IMG/VR virus record: IMGVR_UViG_3300034104_003795
Span: 186,001 to 250,000 of that record
Length of the DNA stretch: 64,000 nucleotides
Strand: one strand, 5' to 3'
In this document: one piece after another, positions 45,823-64,000 of the stretch
Layout of the letters: each line of letters begins with the position of its first letter
Position numbering within the stretch: position 1 is the stretch's first letter
Position numbers and translations under genes: made by a program
Notes under the pieces: model-generated
What the model was told of the DNA's origin: nothing
Database searches by the model: none
The model's input: only the letters and a program-made list of their open reading frames with translations

Positions 45823-45847
45823 TTTATTTTATTTTTTTATGGATTGT

Positions 45848-46966
45848 TTATTTTACGATACCAGCTAATTGCTTAAAGCGGTTAGCTAATTCGTTTGAGC
45901 TTTCAGCGATGATTTCTTTTGCTGGAGCTGTTGTAGCTTGTGGCTTAGAAGCAAAACCTTCGGTCATTGTCTTCTTAGCTGCTACTTTTCTTTCAGTACC
46001 AGTAAACTTCATGCTTTCTGCTAAAGTTGCGTAAACCAATTTAACTTCTCTTACAGAAGATGTTCTGTCTAAATTCTCAACTACTTTTACTTTTTGTTCG
46101 TTAGTTAAGTTGTAAGAACGGAACAATTTGTTTGCGTAAAGTAATTTTGCGTTTAACAAATTTACTTCATTAATAGTGCCTTTTAAAGATTTGATTGTAG
46201 AAATTGCTTCTGCCAATTCTGCTTGAAGTTTTTCTTTTTCTTCATCATGCTTTGGTTCTTCAGCTTCTTTAACTTCTTCTTCATCATCACCATATCCCAT
46301 TTCACGTAAGATTTCATCTAAGTCGATTTCTTCTTCTTCGTGAGCTGGTTCTTCAGTTGGAACTTCTTCAGCTTCAACTGCAGGCTCAGCAGCTACTGGT
46401 TCTTCAACCGGTGCTTCTTCACCTTCTACTGCTGGTTCTTCTTCGTGATATTCATCACCTTCTTCACCTGCAATTTGTGCTTCTAATTCTCTAATGATTG
46501 ATTCTAAATCTAATTCGTCTTCGTCATCAGATTCTTCATCATCACCAAATTCAGGAGCATCTTCACCTTCTGATTGGTATTCAGCTGCATCTTCTGCTTT
46601 ATCTTCTGCAGAAGCTTCATCTTCAACTTCATTAAGGTCTTTAACTTTATCGTAGTCTTCTACTTCACCACCTACTTCCGCAGATTGGTTAGCAATACCA
46701 CTTAGGTCAGTGTCATCGTTGTTTGCTTTATCAGCTGGTTGTTTGTTATCACCACCACCAATTTCGCTTGATACATCATTGTTTTCTTCAACTTTATCTT
46801 CAACTTCTTCGTCATCAGCCATTTCTGCCTGAAGTTTCTTAGAAAGGATAGATTGTAATCTTGGAGTAAATGCTTCTTCAAGAGCGATTTTAGCGTTAGC
46901 AATAGCAGTTTCACGAACAGCTTTAGCATCAGCGATGGCTTCTTTCAACAATTTTGAACTTGCCAT
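45848..46966 (-). CDS. Prohead core scaffold protein (gp22-like)
   Basis: Very acidic, coiled-coil ends (LLKEAIADAKAVRETA...; INEVNLLNAKLLYANKLF...KLVYATLAES), immediately upstream of the capsid gene. Confidence 0.82.
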   Translation of the reverse strand: MASSKLLKEAIADAKAVRETAIANAKIALEEAFTPRLQSILSKKLQAEMADDEEVEDKVEENNDVSSEIGGGDNKQPADKANNDDTDLSGIANQSAEVGGEVEDYDKVKDLNEVEDEASAEDKAEDAAEYQSEGEDAPEFGDDEESDDEDELDLESIIRELEAQIAGEEGDEYHEEEPAVEGEEAPVEEPVAAEPAVEAEEVPTEEPAHEEEEIDLDEILREMGYGDDEEEVKEAEEPKHDEEKEKLQAELAEAISTIKSLKGTINEVNLLNAKLLYANKLFRSYNLTNEQKVKVVENLDRTSSVREVKLVYATLAESMKFTGTERKVAAKKTMTEGFASKPQATTAPAKEIIAESSNELANRFKQLAGIVK

Positions 46967-47118
46967 TTTTTCCTTATTTGTTAGGATTTCTTAAGCTATT
47001 GTAATGTGAGCTTAAATAGAATTATTAATTGGCGTTTTGGTCACTACTCATAGAACGAGAGTATTCATTTTACCAATAAAAAAACGTATATAAAATACGT
47101 TATTGTATCAATAAATAT
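46967..47118 (-). promoter_or_regulatory. Long structured leader of the scaffold-capsid operon with a variant late motif
   Basis: AATAAATAT at 47110-47118; inverted repeats at 47083-47101, 47045-47063 and 46991-47015. Confidence 0.5.
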
Positions 47119-47156
47119 ATAAAAATTAATAAAAACGTAATTTTCTAAAGAATTTT

Positions 47157-48476
47157 TTAGAAAAGATAAATATAAGATGGGTGTTTATCATCTTTTAGTT
47201 TTTGACGGATTCTTTCATCCGAACACCCAAAATGTTCTCCGGCCTCTTTAAGAGAGCAGAATTGAATTCCTTCACACTCAATTATTGGAAGGTGTATTTT
47301 TATTTTTGAACGTAATTGTAATTCGTTCATTTCATCGTAACTGATATCATTACGTTCAACTTTTTTCCAATGACGATATACTGGATTATTTGATTCAAAG
47401 TAGTTTCTAGCTTCTGATTCTGATATTCCTAATTTATCCGCCACCTGTTTTGGGTTCTCAAAAGGAACTCCATCTATTTCGTATTTAATTGTTGGATTAG
47501 TTTCTTCACCAATGATTTGCCAATCTTTGTATTTTGATTTAGTAGAACGGCATCTTCTTTCAACTTCACTTGCCACCAATTCATTTGGATTAATATCAAT
47601 CGCAGCTTCTCTAAAACTTCTATAAGATTTACCATCAACCACACATTTAAACGTATCACCGTTTACAATAGATTCGGTTGCAATATCAGGATTGCCTTTT
47701 ACGAATACCAATATGTTTTGATGAACCGATGCCACTTTGCGATTTCTTTCAAAGTATGTATCAACAACTCTTGATGCTTGGTGTTGTGAATTAAATAGAA
47801 TCATATCGTTGTAGAAATGTAATCCAGCTTCTTCACAAGCTCTAATCGTTTTCCAGACCAAACCTTTATACTTTCCAATCTTATAATTTCCTGTGGTTGA
47901 TTGTTCTCTTACTTCCGATACAACTACTGCAAAGAAACGATTATCTTTTAGTTTTTCTGCAGCTTTTCTTAAAATGGAATAATATTTTTTATCAAACGAA
48001 TCCTCATCCATATTTGAAAGGTCAGCCGGATTATCGGTATATTTCTCTAAATCATAATAAGGTGGACAAGTAAACACAAAATCCTGAGTTTTGTTTTGTA
48101 TTGAATCGATTACCCATTCACTATCGCCTTGTATCCAATTTGGTTTTGTAGATTGTTTTTTGTTTGCTTCAATTTGTTCATCAGAAAGGTCTATACCGTT
48201 ATAGATGTATCCCATTTCAGTTGCAACTATACCTCTAACACTACCACCTGCAAATGGGTCCAATACTCTACCTTCCTCTGGACAAAACCATTCATACATC
48301 TTTTCACAAAGTGTAGCATCAAATATGGAAACGGTATTATCTTCCCAAAAACGGGCTCTACTTTGGGTATTTTCCCTACCCAATTCTGATTGGATATTGT
48401 AGGTGTTAATCCACCATCTTTTACGTTCTTGCCATTCTTTAGAACGAGTATCTAAAATAGAGAAAGGTTTAATCAT
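47157..48476 (-). CDS. DNA amino-methyltransferase (N6-A/N4-C type) fused to three NUMOD1-like HTH modules
   Basis: Motif I LDPFAGGS and motif IV FTCPPYY. C-terminal CVVDGKSYRSFREAA, YEIDGVPFENPKQVADKLGI, IECEGIQFCSLKEAGEHFG. Start moved from 48491 to the ATG at 48476 because the track's extension overlaps the promoter. Confidence 0.85.
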   Translation of the reverse strand: MIKPFSILDTRSKEWQERKRWWINTYNIQSELGRENTQSRARFWEDNTVSIFDATLCEKMYEWFCPEEGRVLDPFAGGSVRGIVATEMGYIYNGIDLSDEQIEANKKQSTKPNWIQGDSEWVIDSIQNKTQDFVFTCPPYYDLEKYTDNPADLSNMDEDSFDKKYYSILRKAAEKLKDNRFFAVVVSEVREQSTTGNYKIGKYKGLVWKTIRACEEAGLHFYNDMILFNSQHQASRVVDTYFERNRKVASVHQNILVFVKGNPDIATESIVNGDTFKCVVDGKSYRSFREAAIDINPNELVASEVERRCRSTKSKYKDWQIIGEETNPTIKYEIDGVPFENPKQVADKLGISESEARNYFESNNPVYRHWKKVERNDISYDEMNELQLRSKIKIHLPIIECEGIQFCSLKEAGEHFGCSDERIRQKLKDDKHPSYIYLF

Positions 48477-48480
48477 AACA

Positions 48481-48512
48481 CAAATATACAAAAAAAGTTT
48501 GGAATTACCAAA
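48481..48512 (-). promoter_or_regulatory. Bacteroidota-type primary-sigma promoter
   Basis: Coding strand TTTG-N20-TATATTTG-TGTT-ATG matches the established -33 TTTG / -7 TAnnTTTG consensus with 19-21-nt spacing. Confidence 0.75.
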
Positions 48513-48516
48513 CTTT
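48490..48516 (-). terminator. Hairpin plus T run overlapping the -33 element (probable terminator of the upstream late transcript)
   Basis: AAAGTTTGG-taatt-CCAAACTTT followed by TTTT on the minus strand, 12 nt after the stop codon of 48529..49443. Confidence 0.6.
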
Positions 48517-48528
48517 CTTTATACTTTT

Positions 48529-49443
48529 TTATTCGAAATCAGGACTTTGTTCTACGTCCTTATATAAATTATCAATATATTTTCTTTCTATATCTGCCAA
48601 ATTTCTTCTATACATTTCCAATTGATTAGTTCCCTTTTTCAAAAGTGGCATCATAGCTTCCTTTTTCTTTGGGTTCTTTTCAGCAAAGTATTTAGCACCC
48701 ATAGCTCTTTGTGCATCTTCTAATTCTCTAACTTTCTTTTGTACTGCTAAGTATTTTACATACATTTTAGGTACACCACCATATAAACCAGCTTCATTTA
48801 CTACTCCTTCCGGTACACAATTTGGAACTTGTCTACCACCCTTATTTTTCATACCAACTTGCTTATATCCTTTCCAACAAGGTGAATCTTCTTTTATTGA
48901 CTCACTTTTAACAACTTTTCCTTTTTGTTTAAAAAGTTGTTTAATATCATCTTGCGCATTTGGGTCATTTTTTCTCCACTTTTTAATTAAATCAAATAAT
49001 TTTCTTTCATCAGAACTATTCAATGGAGCAAGTTTACCTTTACCACTTCCCAATGCCATACCATTTTTGTACCAATATTCAAAATCTTTTACGTCATCAA
49101 ATAACCAAGTTGGTAAAACTCTTATATTAAATGATTCTTTTATTGAACCTTCGTTTGTTCCGTATTCGTGGTAGTTTCCAGCTGCTTGAGAAATATAGTT
49201 TTCTGCTTTAGAGATATGGTCTTGAATCCAAGCTGGTATTTCTTTTTCATTCTCACCCATTTTAGCTTTCAATTCAGTTGCCATCTTAATAATGGTATCT
49301 AATTGATTTTGTCCCATAGAAACTTCGTGGTCTTCACCTTCAGCTTCTTTAATGAATGCAGTTGCAAATGGATTAGAAATTACTTTACCCATTTCAAATT
49401 TACCAAATGCTTTTTGATTTACTAATCCACCTAACTTAATCAT
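48529..49443 (-). CDS. Modular internal head protein (304 aa)
   Basis: ORF track; DHEVSMGQNQL...AWIQDHISKAENYI and PCWKGYKQVGMKNKGGRQVPNCVP modules separated by IKE/VNE sites; lies in the head cluster. Confidence 0.7.
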   Translation of the reverse strand: MIKLGGLVNQKAFGKFEMGKVISNPFATAFIKEAEGEDHEVSMGQNQLDTIIKMATELKAKMGENEKEIPAWIQDHISKAENYISQAAGNYHEYGTNEGSIKESFNIRVLPTWLFDDVKDFEYWYKNGMALGSGKGKLAPLNSSDERKLFDLIKKWRKNDPNAQDDIKQLFKQKGKVVKSESIKEDSPCWKGYKQVGMKNKGGRQVPNCVPEGVVNEAGLYGGVPKMYVKYLAVQKKVRELEDAQRAMGAKYFAEKNPKKKEAMMPLLKKGTNQLEMYRRNLADIERKYIDNLYKDVEQSPDFE

Positions 49444-49445
49444 AA

Positions 49446-50003
49446 TTATTTCTTTTTCATTGCAAGTCTTTCTCTCATTACATCAGTTGGGATATCAGAG
49501 ATTTCATAGTAACGATTTAAGATGTGACCCATATCTTCATATAAAGCATGTAATCTTTCATCCATTGCTTTTGCTTCAACAGAGAACTTATCAAATTGCT
49601 TACCCAACTTATCCAACTCACTCATATTTCTTTTTACAGTTTGAGCATCAAACCAATCGTTAGCTTCTCTTAAAGATAATTCTTTTGCAGCTTCAACAAT
49701 TGCTCCTAATGTTTCTGAAACTTCAGTCATATCTGAATTTCGTTTCATTTGGTCTTGGAAAGTATTGTATGTAGATATAATTTCTAAAAAGTGTTTTTTA
49801 ACTTCTAAAGATAATTTTCTATCAGGTTGTTCTAAATTCTCCTTAATAGAAAATTTACCATCCTTAATCTTTACTTCGTTAATTGCAGTTTTACGGATAT
49901 CATTGTATCCTTTAGCTATTTTATTTACCCCTTTAGGTTGTTCCACATTCAACTTAAATTTGTTGTTGTGTACATAATCATATATGTCGAAATTCTTGCT
50001 CAT
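49446..50003 (-). CDS. Conserved hypothetical head-module protein (185 aa, helical)
   Basis: ORF track; directly downstream of the prohead protease. Confidence 0.75.
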   Translation of the reverse strand: MSKNFDIYDYVHNNKFKLNVEQPKGVNKIAKGYNDIRKTAINEVKIKDGKFSIKENLEQPDRKLSLEVKKHFLEIISTYNTFQDQMKRNSDMTEVSETLGAIVEAAKELSLREANDWFDAQTVKRNMSELDKLGKQFDKFSVEAKAMDERLHALYEDMGHILNRYYEISDIPTDVMRERLAMKKK

Positions 50004-50004
50004 C

Positions 50005-50598
50005 TTATGCTATTTCAGTTATTATTTCTCTCATTAGGTCTTGTGCCTTGCAGTATTCTCCACAAACATCAGTACCAATATTTTTTAGTGGATTTACGGA
50101 TTCGTTCATTGGGACCATAAATGCACCATGTGTAGATGGGTTAGAAACAAAATCCCAACCAATCAATTCAAAGTCTTCTTGTACTTCCACTTTATTTCCA
50201 CTCATAGGTCTAGTTGAACCCATACCTCTTGAAGAAATACCTAATAGAATTCCAGCTTTTAATAACTCTTTAAGAATGTTACCAGATGGAGTTCCTAATA
50301 TTTCAACAGTCCCACAAAGGTCATCACCTTCCCACCAAATTTCTCTGATGTTATGTGATACGTTCTTTAAGTTGATAACCGTTGAATCTGGATGGTCTAA
50401 TTCACCCAATGCTCTACGTTCTTTAATAAACGTTAAATATTTTTTTGCTTCTCTTTCAAGAATTGGTTTTGGATACACTCTACCATTTTGGTTCTCGGCA
50501 CCAGCTCTTTGTAGAACTCCTTTTACCAAAGTTCTTCCACCTTCATCTTCTTTTATTTTACCTTCAAATAGGTGTGTTTCTATTAATAATGATTTCAT
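50005..50598 (-). CDS. gp21: Prohead core protease, T4 gp21-like
   Basis: GVLQRAGAENQNGRVYP...ALGELDHP...VSHNI...GISSRGMGS...WDFVSNPSTHGAF. Confidence 0.93.
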   Translation of the reverse strand: MKSLLIETHLFEGKIKEDEGGRTLVKGVLQRAGAENQNGRVYPKPILEREAKKYLTFIKERRALGELDHPDSTVINLKNVSHNIREIWWEGDDLCGTVEILGTPSGNILKELLKAGILLGISSRGMGSTRPMSGNKVEVQEDFELIGWDFVSNPSTHGAFMVPMNESVNPLKNIGTDVCGEYCKAQDLMREIITEIA

Positions 50599-50607
50599 TC
50601 TATCTTA

Positions 50608-51276
50608 TTATTTTACCGATTCCATTTTACTTCTAATCTTATTAGTAATACTACCTAATTGAGATTTATCAATACCCAACCCATCAACTACTTGTGCTAC
50701 TAATTGTAATTTTTGAGTTGAACTTAATTTAGCATCTTTAATTTTATCAATAGCCATTCCCAATCTTTGTTTAACAGATGATGGTATTGTTGCTTTTGGC
50801 AATTCAGCTGCTATATCTTCGTTAGTTTTACCAGCTCTTAAATCTGCTAAATCATCTCCTTCGATATCACCATCCTTATCAACATCTAATTTATGTTGGT
50901 CACCTTTTAATGCTTCAGTTTTTTCACCTCTACCATTCCAAGCAGAATCAACTTTATTAAAGAATGCTTTCTTTTCATCATCTGTCATATCATTAATACC
51001 CTTCCCAGCTTTTTCTAAAGCTTTTTTGAAGAATGCTTGATAATCTGCTTCTTCTACCATCACTTCTTTTACAAGTTCTTTTAATCTTTCTCTTGATATT
51101 GTTTCTTTGTGCATAGGTAATCCTTTGTGTTTTGTAGATGCATAATCTTTAGCATCTTTCTTTTTCATTGAATCTGCTGCTTTTTCAACTTCTTTAGATG
51201 GTGCTTCCATGTCTCCTTTTTGTAATGCATGGACCATACCCATAAATTTTTGTTGTGCTTTTGATACTGCTGGCAT
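50608..51276 (-). CDS. Head-module protein with a DUF3008-like N-terminus and an EF-hand-like loop (222 aa)
   Basis: MPAVSKAQQKFMGMV...DYASTKHKGLP; DVDKDGDIEGDD. Confidence 0.7.
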   Translation of the reverse strand: MPAVSKAQQKFMGMVHALQKGDMEAPSKEVEKAADSMKKKDAKDYASTKHKGLPMHKETISRERLKELVKEVMVEEADYQAFFKKALEKAGKGINDMTDDEKKAFFNKVDSAWNGRGEKTEALKGDQHKLDVDKDGDIEGDDLADLRAGKTNEDIAAELPKATIPSSVKQRLGMAIDKIKDAKLSSTQKLQLVAQVVDGLGIDKSQLGSITNKIRSKMESVK

Positions 51277-51277
51277 C

Positions 51278-51841
51278 TTATAAAGTTCTTAATTTTTCAG
51301 TTATTCCCATTAACCTTTCTCTGATTTTATATAAAGATGCATTTGTTCTTTTCCAGTAATCTTCTTTCTTAAGTCCATTTTCAGTCTTAATTTTAGAATA
51401 CCAATTAACAAACTTCTCTATTTCAGAAAGTTGTTTGTGTATATTAGAAACTCCTCTACCAACTTTTGCTCTTGGTGAGGATTCTTCTCTTTTTAATTCT
51501 AACCATCTATTTTCCGCAACAATCATTCCACTAATATCTGCAACTTTTGCCGTATCAACTTCTTTTGCAGCGGTTGGTTTCATTGGTAATGCTTCATCTT
51601 TACTAGCTGGCACATCACCCAACGCCCAATCCTTTTCACCTTCTTCTAAATTATCAACTACGGTTCCACCGGTTACTTTTGCTAATCTATTATTTTTCTT
51701 TGCAGTTTGTCCAGGTTTAGCAAATGCAGCAGGAGTATTATATCCTGCAACGTTTCCGGTTACACTCATTTCATCCAATGTTCTTTGAATGTTTCTTTCT
51801 CTAACGTATTTACGAATAGCTTCTTTTAATCTTGCTTCCAT
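51278..51841 (-). CDS. Hypothetical head-module protein (187 aa)
   Basis: ORF track; TAATG overlap with the upstream gene; DEMSVTGNVAGYNTPAAF motif. Confidence 0.75.
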   Translation of the reverse strand: MEARLKEAIRKYVRERNIQRTLDEMSVTGNVAGYNTPAAFAKPGQTAKKNNRLAKVTGGTVVDNLEEGEKDWALGDVPASKDEALPMKPTAAKEVDTAKVADISGMIVAENRWLELKREESSPRAKVGRGVSNIHKQLSEIEKFVNWYSKIKTENGLKKEDYWKRTNASLYKIRERLMGITEKLRTL

Positions 51842-52710
51842 TATTTTACTTTAGATTTAAGTTCCTTAATTAGCTCATAAGAAAGCATAATAGATGAAAC
51901 TTGTCCATCAGATACACTTTTTCCAATTTTCATTTTTTCTAAAACGGAAATAGTTTCTGATAATTTAATTTGTGTAACTTTATCTTTTAGTTTTGATTTA
52001 ATGCTATTTAATTCTGCAATTATATTTGGTAATTCTTTTCCAACATAATCTACGAATTTGGTAGTATTTGAGATGTTGTTTATATATTCTTTCAACAAAT
52101 TCTTTTGAGAATTATCTAAATTTGTATATTTTTTGTTGAAAGTTTCTACTAGAATCTTATAGGTAAGTAATCGTAGGTCTTTGTCTTGTTGTTTATAGGT
52201 TTCAATCAACTTCTTATCTTCGGTTGGTTGAGTTTTTAAAGCAGGTTTTGAGGTAATGTTTTCAATTAGGGTAATTTTAGAATTAAAGATATCTTTAATA
52301 TCATATCCTTCTGCTCTTTTAGATTCAAATACTTTATAGATAGATGCTAGTACTTTATAGTTAGAAATAGGGGATGATAGGAATTGTTCAATTTCAAATT
52401 TTGCCGAAATTTCTTTAATAAGGTTAAATTTTTCTTTAGAAAGTGTATTTTGGTTCAATTTAGCATGTGCATCACATACCGTTTCTACCAATCTATCTGC
52501 TTTTGTTTCAGAACTATATTTTTCCTTTAATAGTATATCATAAAGACGTAGTTCTTTATTTAACTCCGTATTTGGAGCAAAGAACTCTTTTACGATTTTT
52601 TTAGCGTTTTCGGTCTTATCGCCATTAAGAACTTCCAATGTTATTTGTCTTACTAAAAGCTCAAATAACACTCCAGTATTCTTAAACTTGGAATGTTTAA
52701 TTTTTTTCAT
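51841..52710 (-). CDS. Conserved hypothetical head-module protein (289 aa)
   Basis: MKKIKHSKFKNTGVLFELLVRQIT...; directly follows the portal gene. Confidence 0.78.
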   Translation of the reverse strand: MKKIKHSKFKNTGVLFELLVRQITLEVLNGDKTENAKKIVKEFFAPNTELNKELRLYDILLKEKYSSETKADRLVETVCDAHAKLNQNTLSKEKFNLIKEISAKFEIEQFLSSPISNYKVLASIYKVFESKRAEGYDIKDIFNSKITLIENITSKPALKTQPTEDKKLIETYKQQDKDLRLLTYKILVETFNKKYTNLDNSQKNLLKEYINNISNTTKFVDYVGKELPNIIAELNSIKSKLKDKVTQIKLSETISVLEKMKIGKSVSDGQVSSIMLSYELIKELKSKVK

Positions 52711-52750
52711 TTACTTACCCTATATTTGTTCTACCCTATAAACTAACACA

Positions 52751-52759
52751 TATAAATAT
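52751..52759 (-). promoter_or_regulatory. Late-promoter-type motif
   Basis: TATAAATAT on + in the gap between portal and the 289-aa gene. Confidence 0.62.
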
Positions 52760-52776
52760 AAACAAATTAATGTTTA

Positions 52777-54552
52777 TTAAATTTTTGTATCATCTAATAG
52801 GTTTTTTTCATCAAGCATACCCGATTTTTCATTTAAAACCGTCTTTTTTGATGAAATTCCGTTTATATATTCTCTTGCTAACTTCTTAGCGTTTGTATTT
52901 AAATATCTATCATCTCGTTTTCTCTCCTTATGATTCTCCTTATCTCCCAATGGGTCTCTGCCGTATGGGTGTTTATCTTTACCATAAGTGTTTCCTTCTC
53001 TAGGTCTACCCACATTTCTATTCAATTCAATTTCAGTTTTTAACTTTTGAATTTCTTCTTCTACATTTTGTTGTTCTGGTGGATTTGCTGGGTCCTGTCC
53101 TTGTTGTTCAATTGAACTATGTCTGAATCTATCTTTAAGGTCTAAAATTACTTTAGCTCTTTCCATATCAATTTCATCTTGAGATAATCCAAAGATATTA
53201 TGGTATGCCCAATCAGATGATAACATATTAAGTGCTTTTGCATCAGATGCTAATCTAACCTTCTCACTCCATAAGTTTACTTTTTCTTGCTCATAGATTG
53301 TAGAAGCGTTTGTCAAACTTAATTCAAAGTTTGTCATTTCAGAATCTTCTATACCATTTGATGCCAAGTGAACTACTGCAATTTTTGCTAATTCACTAAC
53401 AACCGTTCTTTGAATTCTTTCAATAGTTCTTGCAAAACGAACATCTTCTGCAGCCAATGTAGCTTTACCATTCACATTCTCATCATAAGATAAGTACGCT
53501 TTTGGTACTCTCAAAGCTGCAAATAATTTATGTTTTAAATAATCAATATCTTCAATTGCTGCATAATCTAATCCAGCTAAATTATCAATATTAGTACCAC
53601 TATCACTACCACGTACAGGTAGGAAGAAATCTTCGGTAAGGTTTTGGATATTATATTTTAAGTTGTAATCTCCGGTGTTCTTATCAACAAATGGAGTTTT
53701 CTTCATTTTATTGATAATTTTTTGCATATAGTTATCTACTTCCTGTGGTGGGATATTACCTATATCAATTTTGAACACTCTTTTTTCAGGTGCTCTCATA
53801 ATACGATGAATTAACATCGCATCTTCCATAAGTGATAATTGTTTCCAAATTCTTCTTGCACCCTCAATCATTGATTTACCATAAGGAAGGAAGTTAGTAT
53901 CTGATAACATTCTAAAGTGAGCCATCTCATATTGCTCATATTCCTTCTTGCCAAATCTATCCAATTCAATCTTATATTTTACATAATCAGGATTGTTTGG
54001 GTCAGTACCTTCTAATCTTTCTACATTATATGTTGAGTGAGGTGCTACGTTGATAATACCTTTACCAGGTAGGATTTCTAATGCCAAAAAAGCATCACCA
54101 TATTTTACTAAATTTCTAATCCAAGGCCATAAGTTAAACTCCACATTCATTATATCATAGAATAAATTGTGAAGCATTTCTCTTACATTCTCATTTGTGG
54201 ATTTAATTTGAAGTACATCACCATATTCATTTTTAGTTGTACTTTCATCCGCATATATATCTAAAGCAGAACCAATGATTGGGTCCATATCCATAGCATC
54301 ATAATCTCTAAAAAGTTCTCTACGAACTTGATGATATGCCATTGATTGAGCACCCTGATGAGTTTCAAAATAAGACCTTTGTAACTTCGTATATCTATCT
54401 CTTAAATTTACAAAGTTTGTATTTGATTGACGGTCTTCAATATCAACCACTCTACGTTTACCATCTTTATCAACGGTTACGATTGCATTGGTTGAAAATA
54501 GTTTTTTTAGTCTCCCAAAGAAACTCCTATCGTCTTGAAATTGTTCTGCCAT
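52777..54552 (-). CDS. gp20: Portal protein, T4 gp20-like
   Basis: ALDIYADE...IRNLVKYGDAF...PYGKSMIEGARRIWKQL.LMEDAMLIHRIMRAPEKRVFKIDIGN...EDFFLPVRG...LFAALRVP...EDVRFARTIERIQ. Confidence 0.95.
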   Translation of the reverse strand: MAEQFQDDRSFFGRLKKLFSTNAIVTVDKDGKRRVVDIEDRQSNTNFVNLRDRYTKLQRSYFETHQGAQSMAYHQVRRELFRDYDAMDMDPIIGSALDIYADESTTKNEYGDVLQIKSTNENVREMLHNLFYDIMNVEFNLWPWIRNLVKYGDAFLALEILPGKGIINVAPHSTYNVERLEGTDPNNPDYVKYKIELDRFGKKEYEQYEMAHFRMLSDTNFLPYGKSMIEGARRIWKQLSLMEDAMLIHRIMRAPEKRVFKIDIGNIPPQEVDNYMQKIINKMKKTPFVDKNTGDYNLKYNIQNLTEDFFLPVRGSDSGTNIDNLAGLDYAAIEDIDYLKHKLFAALRVPKAYLSYDENVNGKATLAAEDVRFARTIERIQRTVVSELAKIAVVHLASNGIEDSEMTNFELSLTNASTIYEQEKVNLWSEKVRLASDAKALNMLSSDWAYHNIFGLSQDEIDMERAKVILDLKDRFRHSSIEQQGQDPANPPEQQNVEEEIQKLKTEIELNRNVGRPREGNTYGKDKHPYGRDPLGDKENHKERKRDDRYLNTNAKKLAREYINGISSKKTVLNEKSGMLDEKNLLDDTKI

Positions 54553-54560
54553 AATTTATT

Positions 54561-54998
54561 TTACCATTTTCTACAAGACCAATATCTTGCTTTTGTTCTT
54601 GGACCGGGATTATCACAATTGTGTCTTGCTCTAAAATTAGCCCTTCTACCAGGATTATTTTTCTTAATTTTTACCCCTTTCTGTCCAAAGTTTACTTTAA
54701 TAACTTTACCAGTTTTAGGATTTTTAACATATACCTTAAACTTTTTCACATCACCTGCCATTGGTTTACCCAATTTCACTTCTCTACCTTGATATTCGGC
54801 TTCAAAAACACAACTACAATTAGCTTCATCTAATGATTGTGAATATGCTTTAAGATAATTGATAAAATCATCCATATCTTCTTGCTCTACATCCAATTCA
54901 TCATAATCATCAATTGGATTATCAGCCGGTTGGTCTCCTTTTGAATATGCTTTATCTACATATTCATCTTCTTTTAGGATATTTGTTAATTTAATCAT
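54561..54998 (-). CDS. Head-module protein: acidic N-half, basic Cys-containing C-domain (145 aa)
   Basis: EAEYQGREVKLGKPM...KVNFG...RRANFRARHNCD...KARYWSCRKW; AAGGAG upstream of the ATG. Confidence 0.75.
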   Translation of the reverse strand: MIKLTNILKEDEYVDKAYSKGDQPADNPIDDYDELDVEQEDMDDFINYLKAYSQSLDEANCSCVFEAEYQGREVKLGKPMAGDVKKFKVYVKNPKTGKVIKVNFGQKGVKIKKNNPGRRANFRARHNCDNPGPRTKARYWSCRKW

Positions 54999-55029
54999 TT
55001 TGGTCTCCTTTTTCTATTTTGACATATAT

Positions 55030-55038
55030 CATAAATAT
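55030..55038 (-). promoter_or_regulatory. Variant late motif flanked by an 8-bp inverted repeat
   Basis: CATAAATAT on +, lying between TTTTGACA (55017-55024) and TGTCAAAA (55046-55053). Confidence 0.45.
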
Positions 55039-55062
55039 CTGAAATTGTCAAAACCCTACAAT

Positions 55063-56658
55063 TTATAACCATTGTGATAAATCCTCAAAATCATCACCAA
55101 TTTTCATCTTCCAAGGATTATCATCTCTATCGGATGGTCCATAAACACCAGCATGCTGCATATTCGATGAAATACCACCCAAAGTTCTCTTTGTAAGGTC
55201 AATACCTTCTTGTCTTAAACGAAGTGCAGTATCCCTTACCCACAATCCAATTGATAATGCCATCGTAAGGTCATCGTTATAACCCTTCATAGCTTCTGCT
55301 CTACCATTAATGAATATAAAAGTAAATAATTCATCAATTAAACGATTAGAACGGATTGTTACCGATTTTTCTCTAAAATATTCATCTAATTTAGAAATAA
55401 TTAAAGGTCTAGTTTTAGATGTTGTTGAAAACCCAGCTACCATTTGCCTCTCATCTGCTCTATATTTATTTTTCATTTGGTGTTCAACATCCACATATTT
55501 TAAATCCTTACTCATATAGAATAAGTTTTTATAATCTCTATCTATACATTGTTGAATACACGCCCAACCAATATTTGAGTTTTCTATTACTAATAAAGCA
55601 TCATTATATTCAGTTGATAAGTTTACTAAAAAGTTTCCAAAATCTTTTGTTTCAATTTTACCTTTGTATTCTGCAACCTGTGTTGCATTTAGTACATCTA
55701 TTACGTGACATCCAGAAAAGTCAGCACCATCTCCTCTAGCAACGTCCGCTACTACCATATAAGAGCCGTTTGTAGTTGGATATTCCCATCTCCAAAGATT
55801 GCCATCAAATCCGGTTTTTTCAATTGGATTTTGACAATATGTTTCTTTATAGAACATTAATAATTCTGGATCAATTACAGTATCACCCGAAGATACGAAG
55901 TCACAATCACATTCTTGGGCTGCTTTTTTAGCACCCAATAATCTTTGTTGTTCATCTCTCCAACTCTGGTCTCTTTCAGGATGTACTGTCCAATGTAATC
56001 GTATTGTATTAAATGGATTTGTTCCTTCTTCAGCATCTAACCAAGTTTTGTGGAACCAGTTACCCACACCATTAGGAGTAGAAAGTGCAATACAACTACC
56101 ACCCGTTGATAAGGTTGATTGTGCCGCTACCCAAATCTCATCAATATCATCAATAAACGCAGCCTCATCAAATATAAGTAAAGATAGAGCTTCAGAACGT
56201 CCTGCATCAGGTGAACTCGCAATCGCTTTAATTTGAGAACCATTATTTAAACGAAGGGAAAGTTTGTTATCTTCCAAAGAACCACCCTTTAACCAACTTG
56301 GTAATAAATCGTGCATTACCCTTACTTTAGTTACTAGGTTCTTTGCTACATCTTGTTTTGTTGCAATTACCAACACATTGAAATCGGTATTGAATATCAT
56401 CTTCCAAAGTGCATATCCAGCTGAAAGTGTTGAGATACCAGTTTGACGTGATTTCAATACTATATTAAATCGGTTATCTTTAAATTGTGTTAGAGTTTGT
56501 TCCTGAAATGGGAAAAGGTGAAAAGGTATCTTACCTCTCACCGGATGCTGAATCATACAATACTTTTTCATAAAGTGAATCGGGTCTACCGCACACTTTT
56601 TGTATTCATCTGCTATTATATCCTTCAGGGATTTCTTTTGTGTAATTCCAGTACTCAT
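55063..56658 (-). CDS. terL: Terminase large subunit, T4 gp17-like
   Basis: Walker A VLKSRQTGIST, Walker B LLIFDEAAF, coupling motif LSTPNG, nuclease VVADVARG...NDDLTMA. Confidence 0.96.
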   Translation of the reverse strand: MSTGITQKKSLKDIIADEYKKCAVDPIHFMKKYCMIQHPVRGKIPFHLFPFQEQTLTQFKDNRFNIVLKSRQTGISTLSAGYALWKMIFNTDFNVLVIATKQDVAKNLVTKVRVMHDLLPSWLKGGSLEDNKLSLRLNNGSQIKAIASSPDAGRSEALSLLIFDEAAFIDDIDEIWVAAQSTLSTGGSCIALSTPNGVGNWFHKTWLDAEEGTNPFNTIRLHWTVHPERDQSWRDEQQRLLGAKKAAQECDCDFVSSGDTVIDPELLMFYKETYCQNPIEKTGFDGNLWRWEYPTTNGSYMVVADVARGDGADFSGCHVIDVLNATQVAEYKGKIETKDFGNFLVNLSTEYNDALLVIENSNIGWACIQQCIDRDYKNLFYMSKDLKYVDVEHQMKNKYRADERQMVAGFSTTSKTRPLIISKLDEYFREKSVTIRSNRLIDELFTFIFINGRAEAMKGYNDDLTMALSIGLWVRDTALRLRQEGIDLTKRTLGGISSNMQHAGVYGPSDRDDNPWKMKIGDDFEDLSQWL

Positions 56659-60310: not shown

Positions 60311-60314
60311 ATCA

Positions 60315-60754: not shown

Positions 60755-61507
60755 TTATTTTTTAAATACCGAAACTCCTTTTTCTTTTACAACTTCTCCG
60801 GCACAATAATTAGCCCAATCAATAGATTCTTCTACATTATTAGAATCCAAATACCTGGATACAAATCCGGCTACAAATGTATCACCCGCTCCACTTACAT
60901 CGGCATTTTGAATTCTTTTAGTTCCAATTATCTTACCTCTATAACTTGCTCCCCTACCGTCCAACGTAATGATACATTTATTATATAACCAATCAGTATC
61001 TCTAATAATAGAATCATTATTTTGAGCTTCAAATCTGTTTATTTTTATAAAGGATGTGTTTTTACACCAATCACCTAAATGCTTTTTGGTATCTACTATC
61101 GTAAATTTGGCCATAGATGATATCTTATCAATATCTTCTTCGGTTAGGAATCCCTTACAATAATCCGATATAACAACCGCATCATATTTTACCAAATCCG
61201 GCAAATCGTAGATATCAATTCTATTTGTAGTATCATTTTCATCAACTCGCAAATATAATTCATTTGTATCTTTGTTTACATATCGTGTTTTAGTAATATT
61301 ACCTTTATCAAAATATGTATCAACATCCAATCCCATAGCTTCTAAATTAGATGCTGTGTTGCCCGCCATTCCTTTACTCCAAACTTTTAATTCATCTATT
61401 GGTAAGAAAACTGGTCCATTTCCTTCTGGAGATTTTCTACTTGTTATGCCATACCAAAAAATATCGGTACAAACCTCTCCAATAACTAAAACTTTATACT
61501 TACGCAT
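60755..61507 (-). CDS. hldA: D-glycero-beta-D-manno-heptose-7-phosphate kinase (HldE/RfaE domain I, PfkB fold)
   Basis: VIGEVCTDIFWYGITSRKSPEG (HldE: [22 protein letters not shown]), VISDYCKGFL, DVSGAGDTFVAG. Confidence 0.85.
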   Translation of the reverse strand: MRKYKVLVIGEVCTDIFWYGITSRKSPEGNGPVFLPIDELKVWSKGMAGNTASNLEAMGLDVDTYFDKGNITKTRYVNKDTNELYLRVDENDTTNRIDIYDLPDLVKYDAVVISDYCKGFLTEEDIDKISSMAKFTIVDTKKHLGDWCKNTSFIKINRFEAQNNDSIIRDTDWLYNKCIITLDGRGASYRGKIIGTKRIQNADVSGAGDTFVAGFVSRYLDSNNVEESIDWANYCAGEVVKEKGVSVFKK

Positions 61508-61889
61508 TATGTATTAAATTTGAAGTACTGAATCCTTCTATTTTTTCAAAGTATTTAATTTCTTTGGCAAATTCTTTACCTATTATTTTTTTATTCTTAT
61601 ACTCATCACCAATTACAAAAAAATCAGGATTGTATCTTTTAATTTGTTCTTCTAATTGTTTATCACTTCCAAATATTACAACTATATCAACACCTTCTAT
61701 TTGCATTAAGTTAAACACTCTTTGACCTTCGGTATGAAAAGGTCTATCAGTTCCTTTTAGTTCTTTTACTCTAATATCAGAATCAATACCAATAACCAAT
61801 TGGTCACCTAATGATTTTGCGTATTCAATTAGTTTAAAATGACCGTAGTGTAAAATATCAAAACAACCGTTAATCCAAACTTTTTTCAT
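61500..61889 (-). CDS. hldC: D-glycero-beta-D-manno-heptose-1-phosphate adenylyltransferase (HldE/RfaE domain II)
   Basis: NGCFDILHYGH...YAKSLGDQLVIGIDSD..VKELKG.DRPF...GFSTSNLI. Confidence 0.85.
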   Translation of the reverse strand: MKKVWINGCFDILHYGHFKLIEYAKSLGDQLVIGIDSDIRVKELKGTDRPFHTEGQRVFNLMQIEGVDIVVIFGSDKQLEEQIKRYNPDFFVIGDEYKNKKIIGKEFAKEIKYFEKIEGFSTSNLIHNA

Positions 61890-63037
61890 TATAAGAATTT
61901 TTCCAACTCTTTTATTACCATTTCAGATGTAATACTTTTAGTACATTCAAATTGTCTTTCAGTATCTTTATGGTCAGGACACCAATTCCAATCACCGGCA
62001 TCCAATTTAACTCTATTAAAACATCCTTCACATTTTCCGTCAGGTGCACCAATTCTAATACAATCTTCCATCTCTGCCCATCTATAAGAGAATCCACTTA
62101 TTAATACCGTTGGTACATCTAATGCCCAACTCAACCAACTCAAACCACTACCAATACCAATAAATGCTTTTGATTTTTTCATTTCATCCATTACTAATTC
62201 AATTGGACCGTTTGGATGATGAATTACTCCTATTGGTAATTTATTTCCCATATAGTTATCACCTTCTTTAGAAAGTAATTTTACTAAATAACCCCTACCA
62301 ATCAACCAATCAACTACTTCTTGCCAACCGGTTGGATTGTTCCAAAATTTAGATTGCGCAGTACCATAAGTTGCAATACAAACCTGTTTAATATCATTAT
62401 CTATTTTTACAGGTCTTTGTTTTACTTTTGGTTTTATTTCTTTAAATTCTAACCCAAGTATATCAGAACACATTTTTTGCATTGTTACTGATTTTGGGTC
62501 TGCTGGATTTTTGAATCCATTTACCGAACCATTTTCATTATAAAATAGTCCAACCGAATACATCGCATATAAATTAGGAACAGGTGTACCAGGTTGTACA
62601 AACTCAATATCAGGATATTCTCCTAAAAACATATCGTTCATAAAGGTAGATACTATTACTTCACATTTATGCTGCTTTTTAAATTCTTGTACATAAGGTA
62701 TCCAGGCTAAACTATCTCCCAATGCTTTTGAATCCATTGCAATATAAACTCTCTTACCTTCGGCGTTAAATACCATACTATACCATTCTACGCCATTTTC
62801 GTAAATAACAATTTTCCATTCAATAAAATACTGAATACTACATCTACACCAACAATTGTTATCTATGCTTGTTGTATAGCAAATTTGACCGGTTTTATTA
62901 TTAATAAAATCAACTTTATAATTTGCCTTCTTTGGTCCTTTAATTTCTACAAAAGGACCATTAATAAAATGTATAAGTACATTGTTATTTATTTCCCTAA
63001 TGCTTTTATTATTTTTTTTAAGATTATCGTAAATCAT
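61889..63037 (-). CDS. tibC: Autotransporter-type protein O-heptosyltransferase (Aah/TibC family)
   Basis: N-terminal beta domain (..QYFIEWKIVIY..), ALGDSLAWIPYVQEFKKQHKC, FIGIGSGLSWLSWA...VLISGFS, and the four-Cys iron-finger CEGCFN...WNWCPDH...QFECTKSI. Start set at the TAATG overlap (63037). Confidence 0.88.
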   Translation of the reverse strand: MIYDNLKKNNKSIREINNNVLIHFINGPFVEIKGPKKANYKVDFINNKTGQICYTTSIDNNCWCRCSIQYFIEWKIVIYENGVEWYSMVFNAEGKRVYIAMDSKALGDSLAWIPYVQEFKKQHKCEVIVSTFMNDMFLGEYPDIEFVQPGTPVPNLYAMYSVGLFYNENGSVNGFKNPADPKSVTMQKMCSDILGLEFKEIKPKVKQRPVKIDNDIKQVCIATYGTAQSKFWNNPTGWQEVVDWLIGRGYLVKLLSKEGDNYMGNKLPIGVIHHPNGPIELVMDEMKKSKAFIGIGSGLSWLSWALDVPTVLISGFSYRWAEMEDCIRIGAPDGKCEGCFNRVKLDAGDWNWCPDHKDTERQFECTKSITSEMVIKELEKFL

Positions 63038-64000
63038 TAACTCCAAGTTTTTACTGTTTGGTCTATAAGAGAATATCCTTCGGATTGTTTACAATATACT
63101 TTATTTGTTGTATATCTAAGCTTTGGTTCTTTGTAAAACACATCAGTAAGCCATAAATCAAATCCTTCCCACGGCGTATCATTGAATCTATCAATCCACC
63201 ATTGTTTAGTTCGATTTGGTATTAAGTATGCATGTGCTAAATCTTGATTTGCTGCAGTTTTACTGAATAGTTCATCAACTTTTTCTTTATTTCTAGAACT
63301 ATTATTTGCCAATCCAACATAGTAAACATCATCTCTTTCCGATATAAAACAAGCCTTATTTACTATATCCACAAATTCTTCTAAACCGGTATAAATAAAT
63401 GCATCTGCTTCAAATATCAAAGTATAATCATATTCATCGCTCATTGTTTCCAAAGCCTTTCTATGAGCAGAAAAACATCCATAATGTCTGCCAGTTAAAG
63501 GTCCTAATCCATTTCCAAAATTACCAGGTTTATCTGATATATGTTCTGGTCTTTTACAATGTTCGGATGGTGGAGTTTGGTCATATGGTTTGTTTACCAT
63601 TGGTAGATAATCAATACCATATTTTGATAATTGTTTTAAAGATGCTCTACTCACTCTTTCTCTAACATCATCTGGTCTAGTTAATAGGTGTCTAACTTGT
63701 ATTTTTGGTTTTCTACGAATAAATGAACGAAATCCTTCTTTAAATTGCCCATAGAAGAATTCATTTGCCGCTTGTGTAACTCCGTGAAATACACCATAAT
63801 CATCACCACTTACAATTCCACCTGGTTTAACTTTATTATACCAAAATTGTAAATCTTCTTTTAATGCATCGTAACTATGACCAGCATCTAACATTATATA
63901 ATCTATACTTCCATTTGCAAACTGATTAGATGCATTTTTAGAAGTATCTTTAATCATATTGATATTATCATAGTTATCTGATAATATTGTGTTATCAATA
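63037..64000 (-). CDS. SAM-dependent methyltransferase (Methyltransf_24-like) fused to a GT25-like glycosyltransferase; 5'-partial
   Basis: IDYIMLDAGHSYD...FWYNKVKPGGIVSGDDY, then HYGCFSAH...YTLIFEADA. The frame stays open upstream of 63957 to the window end (IDNTILSDNYDNIN). Confidence 0.75.
   Translation of the reverse strand, partial: IDNTILSDNYDNINMIKDTSKNASNQFANGSIDYIMLDAGHSYDALKEDLQFWYNKVKPGGIVSGDDYGVFHGVTQAANEFFYGQFKEGFRSFIRRKPKIQVRHLLTRPDDVRERVSRASLKQLSKYGIDYLPMVNKPYDQTPPSEHCKRPEHISDKPGNFGNGLGPLTGRHYGCFSAHRKALETMSDEYDYTLIFEADAFIYTGLEEFVDIVNKACFISERDDVYYVGLANNSSRNKEKVDELFSKTAANQDLAHAYLIPNRTKQWWIDRFNDTPWEGFDLWLTDVFYKEPKLRYTTNKVYCKQSEGYSLIDQTVKTWS

What the first reader, a model, noticed from the sequence alone, without database searches (positions are those of the whole stretch)
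60755..64000. Phage-encoded protein heptosylation system, probably glycosylating its own virion
Seen: four genes joined by TAATG or short overlaps encode a methyltransferase/GT25-like fusion, an Aah/TibC-like heptosyltransferase with all four iron-finger cysteines, and both HldE activities. They are co-oriented with, and directly upstream of, the packaging and virion modules. Known: Aah/TibC enzymes transfer heptose from ADP-heptose onto serines in repetitive Ser/Gly-containing autotransporter passengers (AIDA-I, TibA). No autotransporter is present here. Inference: the substrates are the phage's own giant Ser/Gly-rich fibres (about 1600 residues of G-S-S/G-T-S tracts in this window), giving a heptose-coated virion. 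This could stabilise the fibres, shield the particle or alter host attachment. If the host is Bacteroidota, whose LPS cores commonly lack heptose, the phage would need its own donor pathway. GmhA and GmhB are not in this window.
Basis: partly seen in the sequence, partly recalled or inferred. Interest (0 to 1): 0.93.

Follow-up and report, generated by a model that had tools for sequence, protein, structure and literature searches.

The report
Phage operon glycosylating collagen-like fibres
A 274-kb freshwater phage carries a TibC/Aah-type protein heptosyltransferase operon, and gene neighbourhoods in many phages and bacteria suggest it sugar-coats the phage's own proline-free Gly-Ser-Ser/Gly-Thr-Ser collagen-like fibres, a substrate class and a viral setting that I found reported nowhere for this enzyme family.

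Summary
Four tightly coupled minus-strand genes sit upstream of terminase, portal, protease and capsid genes.

- **Gene 1** is cut by the window edge. The full gene is 722 aa, with GT4, sugar-methyltransferase and GT25-like domains.
- **Gene 2** is a TibC/Aah-family heptosyltransferase (TIGR04414 272 bits, cut-off 200; model TM 0.86 to TibC, 0.45 to WaaC). The catalytic Asp, three of four sugar-contact residues and four iron-finger Cys are kept.
- **Genes 3 and 4** resemble HldC (adenylyltransferase) and HldA (kinase).

The "Ser/Gly tracts" are Gly-X-Y collagen repeats: 516 triplets, 870 Ser/Thr and 1 Pro, in three giant virion proteins.

The substrate inference gains independent support. The enzyme belongs to a separate clade from the autotransporter-linked enzymes. 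In this clade, 23 of 33 loci (phages and bacterial chromosomes) have a G-[ST]-[ST] repeat gene, at a median distance of 1 kb. The classical clade has 1 of 50, and its neighbours are AIDA-type autotransporters. Microcystis phage Mel-JY01 has both features. Its relative, Flavobacterium phage immuto, has neither.

Everything here is inferred from sequence; no biochemistry exists.

The parts
63037..64000 (-). 3' part (320 codons) of a 722-aa three-domain glycan-tailoring enzyme: GT4, SAM-dependent sugar methyltransferase (Methyltransf_24/TylF-like) and a GT25-like GT-A domain. The gene runs off the window end.
   Evidence: There is no stop upstream in the window. The full gene is seen in the identical contig L280 and in L003. 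The model of the C-terminal domain best matches COLGALT1. Homologues are present in 79 of 80 relatives. In Mel-JY01 a GT4 domain is fused in one polypeptide with the heptosyltransferase domain.
61889..63037 (-). Protein O-heptosyltransferase of the TibC/Aah (BAHT) family, 382 aa. It belongs to a distinct clade, here called clade A.
   Evidence: TIGR04414 scores 271.6 bits, above the cut-off of 200. TibC matches at E 2e-53. Fold TM is 0.86 to TibC. Asp108, Thr226, Lys230, Trp301 and four Cys are conserved; the site equivalent to TibC Arg-286 is Val282.
61500..61889 (-). HldC / HldE-domain-II-like nucleotidyltransferase, 129 aa. Putative heptose-1-phosphate adenylyltransferase.
   Evidence: TIGR02199 scores 110.9 bits, the best hit but below the 181.5 cut-off. 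phrog_7878 matches at 4e-40. PDB matches are ECT, TagD and HldC. It is present in 39 of 80 relatives.
60755..61507 (-). HldA / HldE-domain-I-like PfkB sugar kinase, 250 aa. Putative heptose-7-phosphate kinase.
   Evidence: TIGR02198 scores 92.8 bits, the best hit but below the 345 cut-off. The best PDB hit is Burkholderia HldA 4e84. phrog_8133 matches at 9e-63. It is present in 27 of 80 relatives.
11089..22278 (-). Giant fibre protein of 3729 aa, a proposed substrate. Its collagen-like tract of 309 triplets spans residues 2490-3544 (DNA 11647-14811).
   Evidence: PF01391 Collagen scores 326 bits. The tract is conserved in 25 of 25 homologues that reach the region.
1..9045 (-). Second giant fibre protein, at least 3015 aa, which runs off the window start. 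A proposed substrate. It has 147 G-S-S/G-T-S triplets at DNA 7021-8352.
   Evidence: The frame is open from 9045 to position 1. A tail-fibre assembly chaperone lies at 9739-10182.
39495..43655 (-). 1386-aa collagen-like protein encoded just after the major head protein. A proposed substrate. It has 60 triplets at DNA 42588-43484.
   Evidence: PF01391 scores 68.7 bits. The tract length varies among relatives: the homologue in L179 is 131 aa.
44158..56658 (-). Context: the packaging and head module downstream of the operon. TerL is at 55063-56658, portal at 52777-54552, protease at 50005-50598 and major head protein at 44158-45822.
   Evidence: PHROG hits.

Best explanation
This is a late-expressed virion glycosylation operon of a jumbo myovirus of about 274 kb.

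Proposed mechanism:
1. The TibC-like enzyme transfers heptose from ADP-heptose onto Ser/Thr hydroxyls of the (Gly-Ser-Ser / Gly-Thr-Ser)n collagen-like tracts. It acts on newly made fibre proteins in the host cytoplasm. These tracts hold about 870 candidate sites in the window.
2. The adjacent three-domain enzyme (GT4, methyltransferase, GT25-like) then extends and O-methylates the sugar.
3. The HldA- and HldC-like enzymes are an optional booster. They raise flux through the host's ADP-heptose pathway (steps 2 and 4). The host provides GmhA and GmhB.
4. The product would be a densely glycosylated, proline-free collagen-like stalk. Glycans, rather than hydroxyproline, would stabilise, stiffen or protect it.

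Shown here: family membership and fold of the transferase, conservation of its catalytic residues, and the gene-neighbourhood association.

Inferred: the substrate, the sugar, the order of steps and the structural role.
For: Enzyme identity:
- TIGR04414 scores above its cut-off.
- TibC matches at E 2e-53.
- The model has TM 0.86 to TibC and 0.45 to WaaC.
- The catalytic Asp, Thr226, Lys230, Trp (TibC 305) and four iron-finger Cys are conserved. The residue list comes from PMC4358343.

Substrate by association:
- The tree splits into two groups, each with 100% support.
- The window's clade has S/T-rich Gly-X-Y genes in 23 of 33 loci, at a median distance of 988 nt. The other clade has 1 of 50. 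Fisher p is about 1e-11. For loci of at least 15 kb the counts are 19 of 22 against 1 of 25.
- The trait needs 9 changes on the tree, against 21.8 in shuffles (0 of 500 shuffles as low).
- Positive control: 4 of 4 tested enzymes of the other clade are followed by AIDA-repeat autotransporters, their known substrates.
- In Mb-scale bacterial contigs with housekeeping neighbours, the partners are small Sec- or lipoprotein-signal proteins made of (GTS)n or (GSS)n.

Phage phyletic pattern:
- Mel-JY01 has 216 triplets, all within 10 kb of the enzyme, and none in its other 170 kb.
- LR756501 has tracts 5 kb away.
- Immuto (TerL 57.5% identical) has no enzyme and no tract.

Coupling with tailoring enzymes:
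- A GT4 domain and the heptosyltransferase domain are fused in one polypeptide in Mel-JY01.
- Such fusions are common in the nearest clusters: GT4 in 26 of 64 and FkbM methyltransferase in 11 of 64.

Donor:
- The Hld-like genes are inserted directly after the transferase when present.

Conservation:
- The transferase is in 80 of 80 relatives and the fibre tract in 25 of 25.
Against: - There is no biochemical or proteomic evidence.
- In the window the nearest long tract is 18 kb from the operon. Adjacency is seen in other lineages, not here. Short GTS runs do occur in the fibre gene about 6-7 kb upstream (L280).
- The adenine-contacting Arg-286 of TibC is invariant in the classical clade (50 of 50). 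It is Val in the window and Arg in only 9 of 34 clade members. ADP specificity is therefore not assured.
- Mel-JY01 has no Hld homologues at all.
- LR756504 has the enzyme but no Gly-X-Y tract within 70 kb on either side.
- Ten of 34 clade rows show no tract. Five of these are contigs of 6 kb or less.
- Known BAHT substrates are beta-helical repeats held in a dodecamer channel. A collagen-like or unfolded chain is a very different acceptor. In the model, the region of the beta-hairpin thumb that builds the dodecamer shows no clear hairpin.
- The Fisher test ignores shared ancestry; there are roughly ten independent lineages.
- The tract criterion (at least 6 triplets, at least 60% S/T) was chosen after seeing the window.
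Confidence: 0.62

Rival explanations
1. The operon glycosylates virion or phage proteins, but the acceptors are not the collagen-like tracts. Candidates are beta-helix-like repeat regions of the giant fibres, or capsid and tail proteins as in mycobacteriophages.
For: Known BAHT acceptors are strand-loop-strand motifs of beta-helices (PMC4358343). The giant fibres also contain long non-collagen repeat regions. LR756504 has the enzyme without any nearby tract. In the window the tracts are 18-55 kb from the operon.
Against: The recurrent and often immediate adjacency is to G-[ST]-[ST] repeat genes specifically. This includes small bacterial proteins that are little more than a signal peptide plus a tract. 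Immuto has large tail fibres and spikes but neither tract nor enzyme.
Confidence: 0.15
2. The tract proteins are glycosylated by this enzyme, but the sugar is not heptose from ADP-heptose. This clade would have changed its nucleotide-sugar donor.
For: The adenine-reading Arg-286 is lost in the window and in 25 of 34 clade members. Mel-JY01, whose host is a cyanobacterium, has no Hld genes. Half of the relatives lack Hld genes. The 129-aa nucleotidyltransferase matches cytidylyltransferases in the PDB better than HldC.
Against: The heptose- and phosphate-contacting Thr, Lys and Trp are conserved. When supply genes are present beside the transferase, their best family hits are the two HldE domains and HldA. 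The nearest folds after TibC are all ADP-heptose enzymes.
Confidence: 0.2
3. The operon is a host-directed auxiliary module. It would remodel host LPS, capsule or surface proteins during infection, for example for superinfection exclusion, and would not modify the virion.
For: Phage-encoded HldE-like genes already exist as PHROG families annotated as LPS-pathway enzymes. GT4 and GT25 families include LPS enzymes.
Against: The transferase is TibC-type and not WaaC/WaaF-type. It is universally conserved between a fibre gene and the packaging genes, in the same orientation. It tracks tract-bearing proteins across phages and bacteria.
Confidence: 0.05

Closest known systems
TibC / Aah bacterial autotransporter heptosyltransferases (BAHT; E. 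coli TibC-TibA, Aah-AIDA-I)
   Same: Same family by curated HMM, sequence and fold. It has the N-terminal beta-barrel plus GT-B core, the catalytic Asp, the Thr/Lys/Trp donor contacts and the four-Cys iron finger. It probably acts in the cytoplasm on a protein that later leaves the cell.
   Different: It sits in a separate clade with full support. It has no autotransporter neighbour; the partner genes encode G-[ST]-[ST] collagen-like repeats. The adenine-binding Arg-286 is not conserved. The thumb region looks different in the model. It is often fused or paired with GT4 and methyltransferase domains. It is encoded by a virus.
Mycobacteriophage virion glycosylation (Freeman et al. 2023, as cited in PMC12619734)
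   Same: Phage-encoded glycosyltransferases that decorate the phage's own structural proteins.
   Different: Different enzyme families and different acceptors (C-termini of capsid and tail tube subunits). No heptose and no collagen-like repeats. That system is shown experimentally; this one is not.
Glycosylated collagen-like proteins: Bacillus BclA (Gly-Pro-Thr repeats) and vent-worm cuticle collagen with glycosylated Thr (references listed in PMC11923368)
   Same: O-glycans sit on Thr (or Ser) inside Gly-X-Y repeats. In the worm collagen, glycosylated Thr takes the stabilising role of hydroxyproline. This is the proposed role here (from my own knowledge plus the cited titles).
   Different: Those repeats contain proline, and the sugars are rhamnose-based or galactose, added by unrelated enzymes. 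Here the tracts have 1 Pro in 516 triplets and the enzyme is a BAHT.
GT25 collagen galactosyltransferase COLGALT1 and Mimivirus R655/R699
   Same: The C-terminal domain of the upstream gene has its best structural matches to these enzymes. They too occur in a collagen-glycosylating or viral setting.
   Different: Only 14-17% identity and TM about 0.6. The Pfam GT25 score is below the cut-off. The acceptor here is presumably a sugar on Ser/Thr, not hydroxylysine.
HldE (or separate HldA/HldC) of the ADP-heptose pathway
   Same: A PfkB kinase and a cytidylyltransferase-fold enzyme whose best matches are the two HldE domains.
   Different: They are separate genes in C-then-A order, shortened (250 and 129 aa) and below the curated cut-offs. 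gmhA, gmhB and hldD are not seen. They are accessory within the phage clade.

Membership tests
BAHT (TibC/Aah protein O-heptosyltransferases, TIGR04414) | Full-length match to the curated family model above its cut-off | tested here: met
   271.6 bits against a cut-off of 200. Residues 22-383 align to model positions 11-373 of 374.
BAHT (TibC/Aah protein O-heptosyltransferases, TIGR04414) | TibC architecture (beta-barrel, GT-B core, iron-finger insertion), distinct from the LPS heptosyltransferases WaaC/WaaF | tested here: met
   AF2 model pLDDT 92. TM 0.86 and rmsd 2.6 A over 374 columns to 4rap. WaaC/WaaF give TM 0.45-0.52.
BAHT (TibC/Aah protein O-heptosyltransferases, TIGR04414) | Catalytic base Asp-110 and the four iron-coordinating Cys (TibC 339, 342, 358, 370) | tested here: met
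   Window Asp108 and Cys336, 339, 353, 365. These are near-invariant in both clades.
BAHT (TibC/Aah protein O-heptosyltransferases, TIGR04414) | ADP-heptose contacts Thr-226, Lys-230, Trp-305 and Arg-286 | tested here: inconclusive
   Thr, Lys and Trp are conserved. Arg-286 is Val282 in the window. It is Arg in 9 of 34 members of this clade against 50 of 50 in the classical clade.
BAHT (TibC/Aah protein O-heptosyltransferases, TIGR04414) | Gene adjacent to an autotransporter substrate with AIDA-type repeats | tested here: not met
   No autotransporter domain was found in the window proteins that I scanned. Classical-clade controls have one in 4 of 4 cases. Partners in this clade are G-[ST]-[ST] repeat proteins.
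BAHT (TibC/Aah protein O-heptosyltransferases, TIGR04414) | Dodecameric ring built by the beta-hairpin thumb; heptosyl transfer to Ser | not testable with these tools
   Only a monomer model is available. The thumb region (about residues 255-277) shows no clear hairpin in the DSSP string. Activity needs an assay.
HldE / HldA+HldC (ADP-heptose synthesis) | Equivalog-level match to the RfaE domain I and domain II models | tested here: not met
   92.8 bits against a cut-off of 345, and 110.9 bits against 181.5. These are nevertheless the best-scoring families, by 61 and 44 bits over the next.
HldE / HldA+HldC (ADP-heptose synthesis) | Complete pathway context (gmhA, gmhB) | tested here: not met
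   No SIS or HAD domain in the window ORFs that I scanned, or in the 10 kb upstream. The rest of the 274-kb genome was not scanned.
GT25 (Glyco_transf_25) | Pfam model above its gathering score | tested here: not met
   17.6 and 16.7 bits against a cut-off of 24.
GT25 (Glyco_transf_25) | GT-A fold closest to solved GT25 enzymes | tested here: met
   The top PDB hits are COLGALT1 chains (E 2e-8, TM 0.59-0.65), followed by Mimivirus R655.
Collagen triple-helix repeat (PF01391) | Uninterrupted Gly-X-Y periodicity above the Pfam cut-off | tested here: met
   326 bits for the 3729-aa protein and 68.7 bits for the 1386-aa protein. There are 516 triplets in runs of at least 6.
Collagen triple-helix repeat (PF01391) | Actual triple-helix formation (normally aided by Pro/Hyp or charge pairs) | not testable with these tools
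   Only 1 Pro in 516 triplets. Whether the tract folds as a triple helix, with or without glycans, needs CD or EM.

The most novel reading that the evidence does not exclude
A previously unrecognised branch of the TibC/Aah family, shared by bacteria and large phages, has proline-free (Gly-Ser/Thr-Ser)n proteins as its native substrates. Dense O-heptosylation, further extended and methylated in phages, would replace hydroxyproline as the stabiliser of a collagen-like triple helix. The result would be 'glyco-collagen' fibres on virions and 'glyco-collagen' surface proteins on cells.
Probability: 0.35. Interest if true: 0.9.

Novelty: new variant of a known kind. Interest (0 to 1): 0.8.

Why it matters
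- **Scope of the modification.** Protein heptosylation is still described as a rare modification of autotransporter adhesins in Gram-negative pathogens (PMC13417296). If this reading is right, the family has a second, larger and mostly environmental branch. That branch has 1454 clusters at 50% identity and several hundred species genomes. It would have a different substrate class.
- **Viral use.** Viruses would use the modification on their own particles. The phage clade is abundant: 271 IMG/VR contigs carry the transferase and at least 594 carry the portal.
- **Fibre biophysics.** It would explain how kilo-residue Gly-X-Y tracts without proline can serve as fibres.
- **Annotation rule.** It gives a simple, testable rule for annotating 'TibC-like' genes outside enterobacteria.
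- **Wider interest.** Glycan-coated fibres bear on host recognition, particle stability and the engineering of glycosylated collagen-like materials.

Tried and rejected
- **Megablast of 20 kb against GenBank phages:** no match.
- **Promoter and terminator scan of 55-64 kb:** counts equal those in shuffles, so it says nothing about the transcription unit.
- **Portal-centred loci as a within-clade co-occurrence test:** uninformative. Every locus that reaches the position has the transferase, and most contigs end before the fibre genes.
- **The 982-aa cytidylyltransferase-like protein next to the operon as a possible missing adenylyltransferase:** rejected as part of the system. It is NMNAT/NadR-like. 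A protein annotated NadR and a weak partial match occur upstream of TerL in phage immuto, which has no transferase.
- **Moraphage membership (PMC12619734):** size, habitat and a Bacteroidota-infecting relative fit, but I could not test it.
- **Literature search with the term 'BAHT':** swamped by the Thai currency.
- **Extending LR756504 by 50 kb on each side:** no tract found. I kept this as a genuine exception.
- **Fetching an aah/AIDA plasmid as a tree yardstick:** not done. Chromosomal enterobacterial members already in hand served as the classical clade.

Full report
**What is in the window**

- All long ORFs lie on the minus strand.
- The window is 100% identical to part of IMG/VR contig 3300034104_003795, which is 273,997 nt long. 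The source is therefore a jumbo phage.
- Its markers are those of a T4-like myovirus: TerL, portal, prohead protease, major head protein, a gp15-like sheath stabiliser and a tail-fibre assembly chaperone.
- The closest cultured relatives by TerL are Flavobacterium phage immuto (57.5% identity) and Microcystis phage Mel-JY01 (55.3%).

**The observation**

- **Gene 1** is cut by the window edge.
  - Contig L280 is identical to the window over its last 4 kb. There the gene encodes 722 aa.
  - It has a GT4 domain, a Methyltransf_24/TylF-like domain and a weakly GT25-like C-terminal domain.
  - I modelled that last domain (pLDDT 88.4). Its best solved relatives are the collagen galactosyltransferase COLGALT1 and Mimivirus R655.
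- **Gene 2** passes the curated Aah/TibC model at 271.6 bits, against a cut-off of 200.
  - LPS heptosyltransferase models score 24 bits or less.
  - It aligns to TibC at E 2e-53.
  - Its model (pLDDT 92) superposes on TibC with TM 0.86, and on WaaC/WaaF with TM 0.45-0.52.
- **Genes 3 and 4** find the two HldE domains as their best families, below the curated cut-offs.
  - The kinase's best solved relative is Burkholderia HldA.
  - Both belong to existing PHROG families. The transferase matches none.
- **gmhA and gmhB:** no SIS or HAD domain appears in the window ORFs that I scanned or in the 10 kb upstream.

**The 'Ser/Gly tracts' are collagen repeats**

- The tracts are strict Gly-X-Y triplets. 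There are 516 triplets in runs of six or more.
- Of these, 206 are G-S-S and 162 are G-T-S. They hold 870 Ser/Thr and a single proline.
- Pfam Collagen scores 326 and 69 bits.
- The tracts lie in three proteins:
  - a 3729-aa fibre;
  - a 1386-aa protein just after the head protein;
  - a third giant ORF (9045 to position 1) that the ORF list omits because it runs off the window.
- The fibre gene upstream of the operon also has short G-T-S runs.

**Testing the substrate idea**

I fetched relatives of the transferase from viral contigs, GenBank phages and one genome per bacterial species. I scanned every locus for Gly-X-Y runs of at least six triplets with at least 60% Ser/Thr in the X and Y positions.

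A maximum-likelihood tree splits the family into two groups, each with 100% support.

- **The classical group.**
  - It contains Enterobacteria, Burkholderia, Selenomonadales and Lentisphaerae.
  - Only 1 of its 50 loci has such a tract.
  - All four members I tested are followed directly by an AIDA-repeat autotransporter, the known substrate type. The neighbour-equals-substrate rule therefore works in this family.
- **The window's group.**
  - 23 of 33 loci carry a tract, at a median distance of 988 nt from the transferase. For loci of at least 15 kb the count is 19 of 22.
  - Fisher p is about 1e-11. This is not corrected for shared ancestry, and about ten lineages are involved.
  - Two members lie on Mb-scale bacterial contigs among housekeeping genes. 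Their partners are small secreted proteins or lipoproteins that are little more than a signal peptide plus (GTS)n or (GSS)n.

Among phages:

- **Mel-JY01.** A GT4 domain and the transferase domain are fused in one 1226-aa protein.
  - A G-T-S/G-S-S ORF of about 1000 aa (766 codons read directly) ends 1.7 kb upstream of it.
  - There is no other Gly-X-Y run in the remaining 170 kb.
- **LR756501** has tracts 5 kb from its copy.
- **Immuto** has no transferase, no Hld genes and no such tract in its 160 kb.
- **Within the window's own clade,** the transferase is present in 80 of 80 loci. The long tract of the giant fibre is present in 25 of 25 homologues that reach it, even at 48% N-terminal identity.
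- **Exceptions.** LR756504 has no tract within 70 kb on either side. Several loci also lack one, half of them very short contigs.

**Donor and tailoring**

- Using the TibC residue list (PMC4358343), the catalytic Asp, Thr-226, Lys-230, Trp-305 and the four iron-finger Cys are conserved.
- The adenine-contacting Arg-286 is invariant in the classical group. It is Val in the window and Arg in only 9 of 34 members of its own group.
- The Hld-like genes are accessory.
  - The adenylyltransferase is in 39 of 80 relatives and the kinase in 27 of 80. They always sit between the transferase and the next conserved gene.
  - Mel-JY01 has neither.
- With gmhA and gmhB absent, the phage genes look like a booster of a host pathway, not a self-sufficient one.
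- The nearest 150 cluster representatives are mostly multidomain proteins (127 are longer than 450 aa).
  - Of 64 scanned, 26 have GT4 and 11 have an FkbM methyltransferase.
  - This points to glycans that are extended and methylated after the first sugar.

**Most likely mechanism**

1. Late in infection, the transferase loads heptose onto tract Ser/Thr of fibre proteins in the cytoplasm.
2. The GT4/methyltransferase/GT25-like enzyme elaborates the glycan.
3. Where present, the Hld-like pair raises the ADP-heptose supply.
4. The glycan coat stabilises, stiffens or protects a proline-free collagen-like stalk.

There are precedents for the last step. [quoted passage not shown]

My confidence:

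| Claim | Confidence |
|---|---|
| The enzyme is a TibC-type protein glycosyltransferase | about 0.9 |
| The tracts are its substrates | about 0.65 |
| The sugar is heptose from ADP-heptose | about 0.6-0.7 |
| The glycan has a stabilising role | about 0.35 |

**Novelty**

- Databases already auto-name such phage proteins. JGI calls them 'autotransporter strand-loop-strand O-heptosyltransferase'. One BFVD entry is named 'Glycosyltransferase Aah/TibC' from an uncultured phage.
- Full-text searches found no paper that links this family to phages or to collagen-like proteins.
- A 2026 paper still describes heptosylation as a rare bacterial, autotransporter-centred modification.
- The 'moraphage' paper on large freshwater phages notes core glycosyltransferases but not this enzyme.
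- I therefore rate this a new variant of a known kind. It is well supported by comparative genomics and untested at the bench.

Noticed in passing
L001 (PP395634.1) 2-3052, + strand: In Microcystis phage Mel-JY01 the long G-T-S/G-S-S collagen-like ORF is on the + strand and apparently runs across the record start. The deposited annotation instead lists antisense CDSs (1-651 and 739-2298, minus strand). The ORF also contains Gly-Pro-Pro stretches, and the genome encodes a prolyl 4-hydroxylase (record 146571-147170).
   Followed up: partly
L280 5468-7465 (upstream of the window end; corresponds to about window 65573-67570): A 665-aa radical SAM/SPASM protein lies two genes upstream of the operon in the window's own genome. 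It is present in only about 3 of 80 relatives, so it is another accessory gene of unknown role next to the glycosylation genes.
   Followed up: partly
L003 11146-11538 compared with window 61500-61889: The relative L003 shares 98% identity in the transferase and 84-100% in flanking genes, but only 48% in the adenylyltransferase. Relatives fall into two identity classes (about 46-54% and 62-91%). This suggests cassette replacement of this gene.
   Followed up: no
window 57395-60343 (-): A 982-aa protein has an N-terminal NMN-adenylyltransferase-like domain and DUF5661. It is conserved upstream of TerL in the whole clade and in Mel-JY01. Immuto has a protein annotated NadR upstream of its TerL and a weak partial match. 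It is probably NAD salvage and not part of the glycosylation system.
   Followed up: partly
window 23289-35843 (-): A 4184-aa ORF lies between the two fibre regions. It has no significant Pfam domain and no Gly-X-Y tract. It is a giant virion-module protein of unknown nature.
   Followed up: no
window 47157-48491 (-): A 444-aa protein inside the head module matches phrog_12517 and a PHROG annotated as DNA methyltransferase (E 2e-62). This is an odd location for such a gene.
   Followed up: no
L116 8513-8926, 11169-11780, 12122-12583 (Arenicellales chromosome): Three small lipoprotein-signal proteins flank the bacterial transferase. Each has a GSS/GTS tract that ends in a poly-Asp tail. In L101 a 293-aa Sec-signal protein carries (GTS)39. 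These may form an undescribed class of bacterial surface proteins.
   Followed up: partly
L146 11566-11754 (Bordetella sputigena): This is the only classical-clade locus with an S/T-rich Gly-X-Y run: 21 triplets, mostly GSS, 510 nt downstream of the transferase.
   Followed up: no
L179 19976-20371 compared with window 39495-43655: In a relative with 75% transferase identity, the homologue of the 1386-aa collagen-like protein is only 131 aa and has two or three G-T-S triplets. Tract and protein length at this position are therefore highly variable.
   Followed up: partly
window 6803-8980 and 12792-14965 (+): Long plus-strand ORFs (685-725 aa) overlap the tracts. They are antisense artefacts of the repetitive Gly-Ser-Ser coding sequence, not genes.
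   Followed up: yes
L275 (NC_055915.1) record about 49-60 kb: Flavobacterium phage immuto lacks the heptosyltransferase but has its own cluster of about ten sugar-modifying genes (glycosyltransferases, WecE aminotransferases, an epimerase and a 'pilin glycosylation protein'). Related phages may glycosylate by other routes.
   Followed up: no
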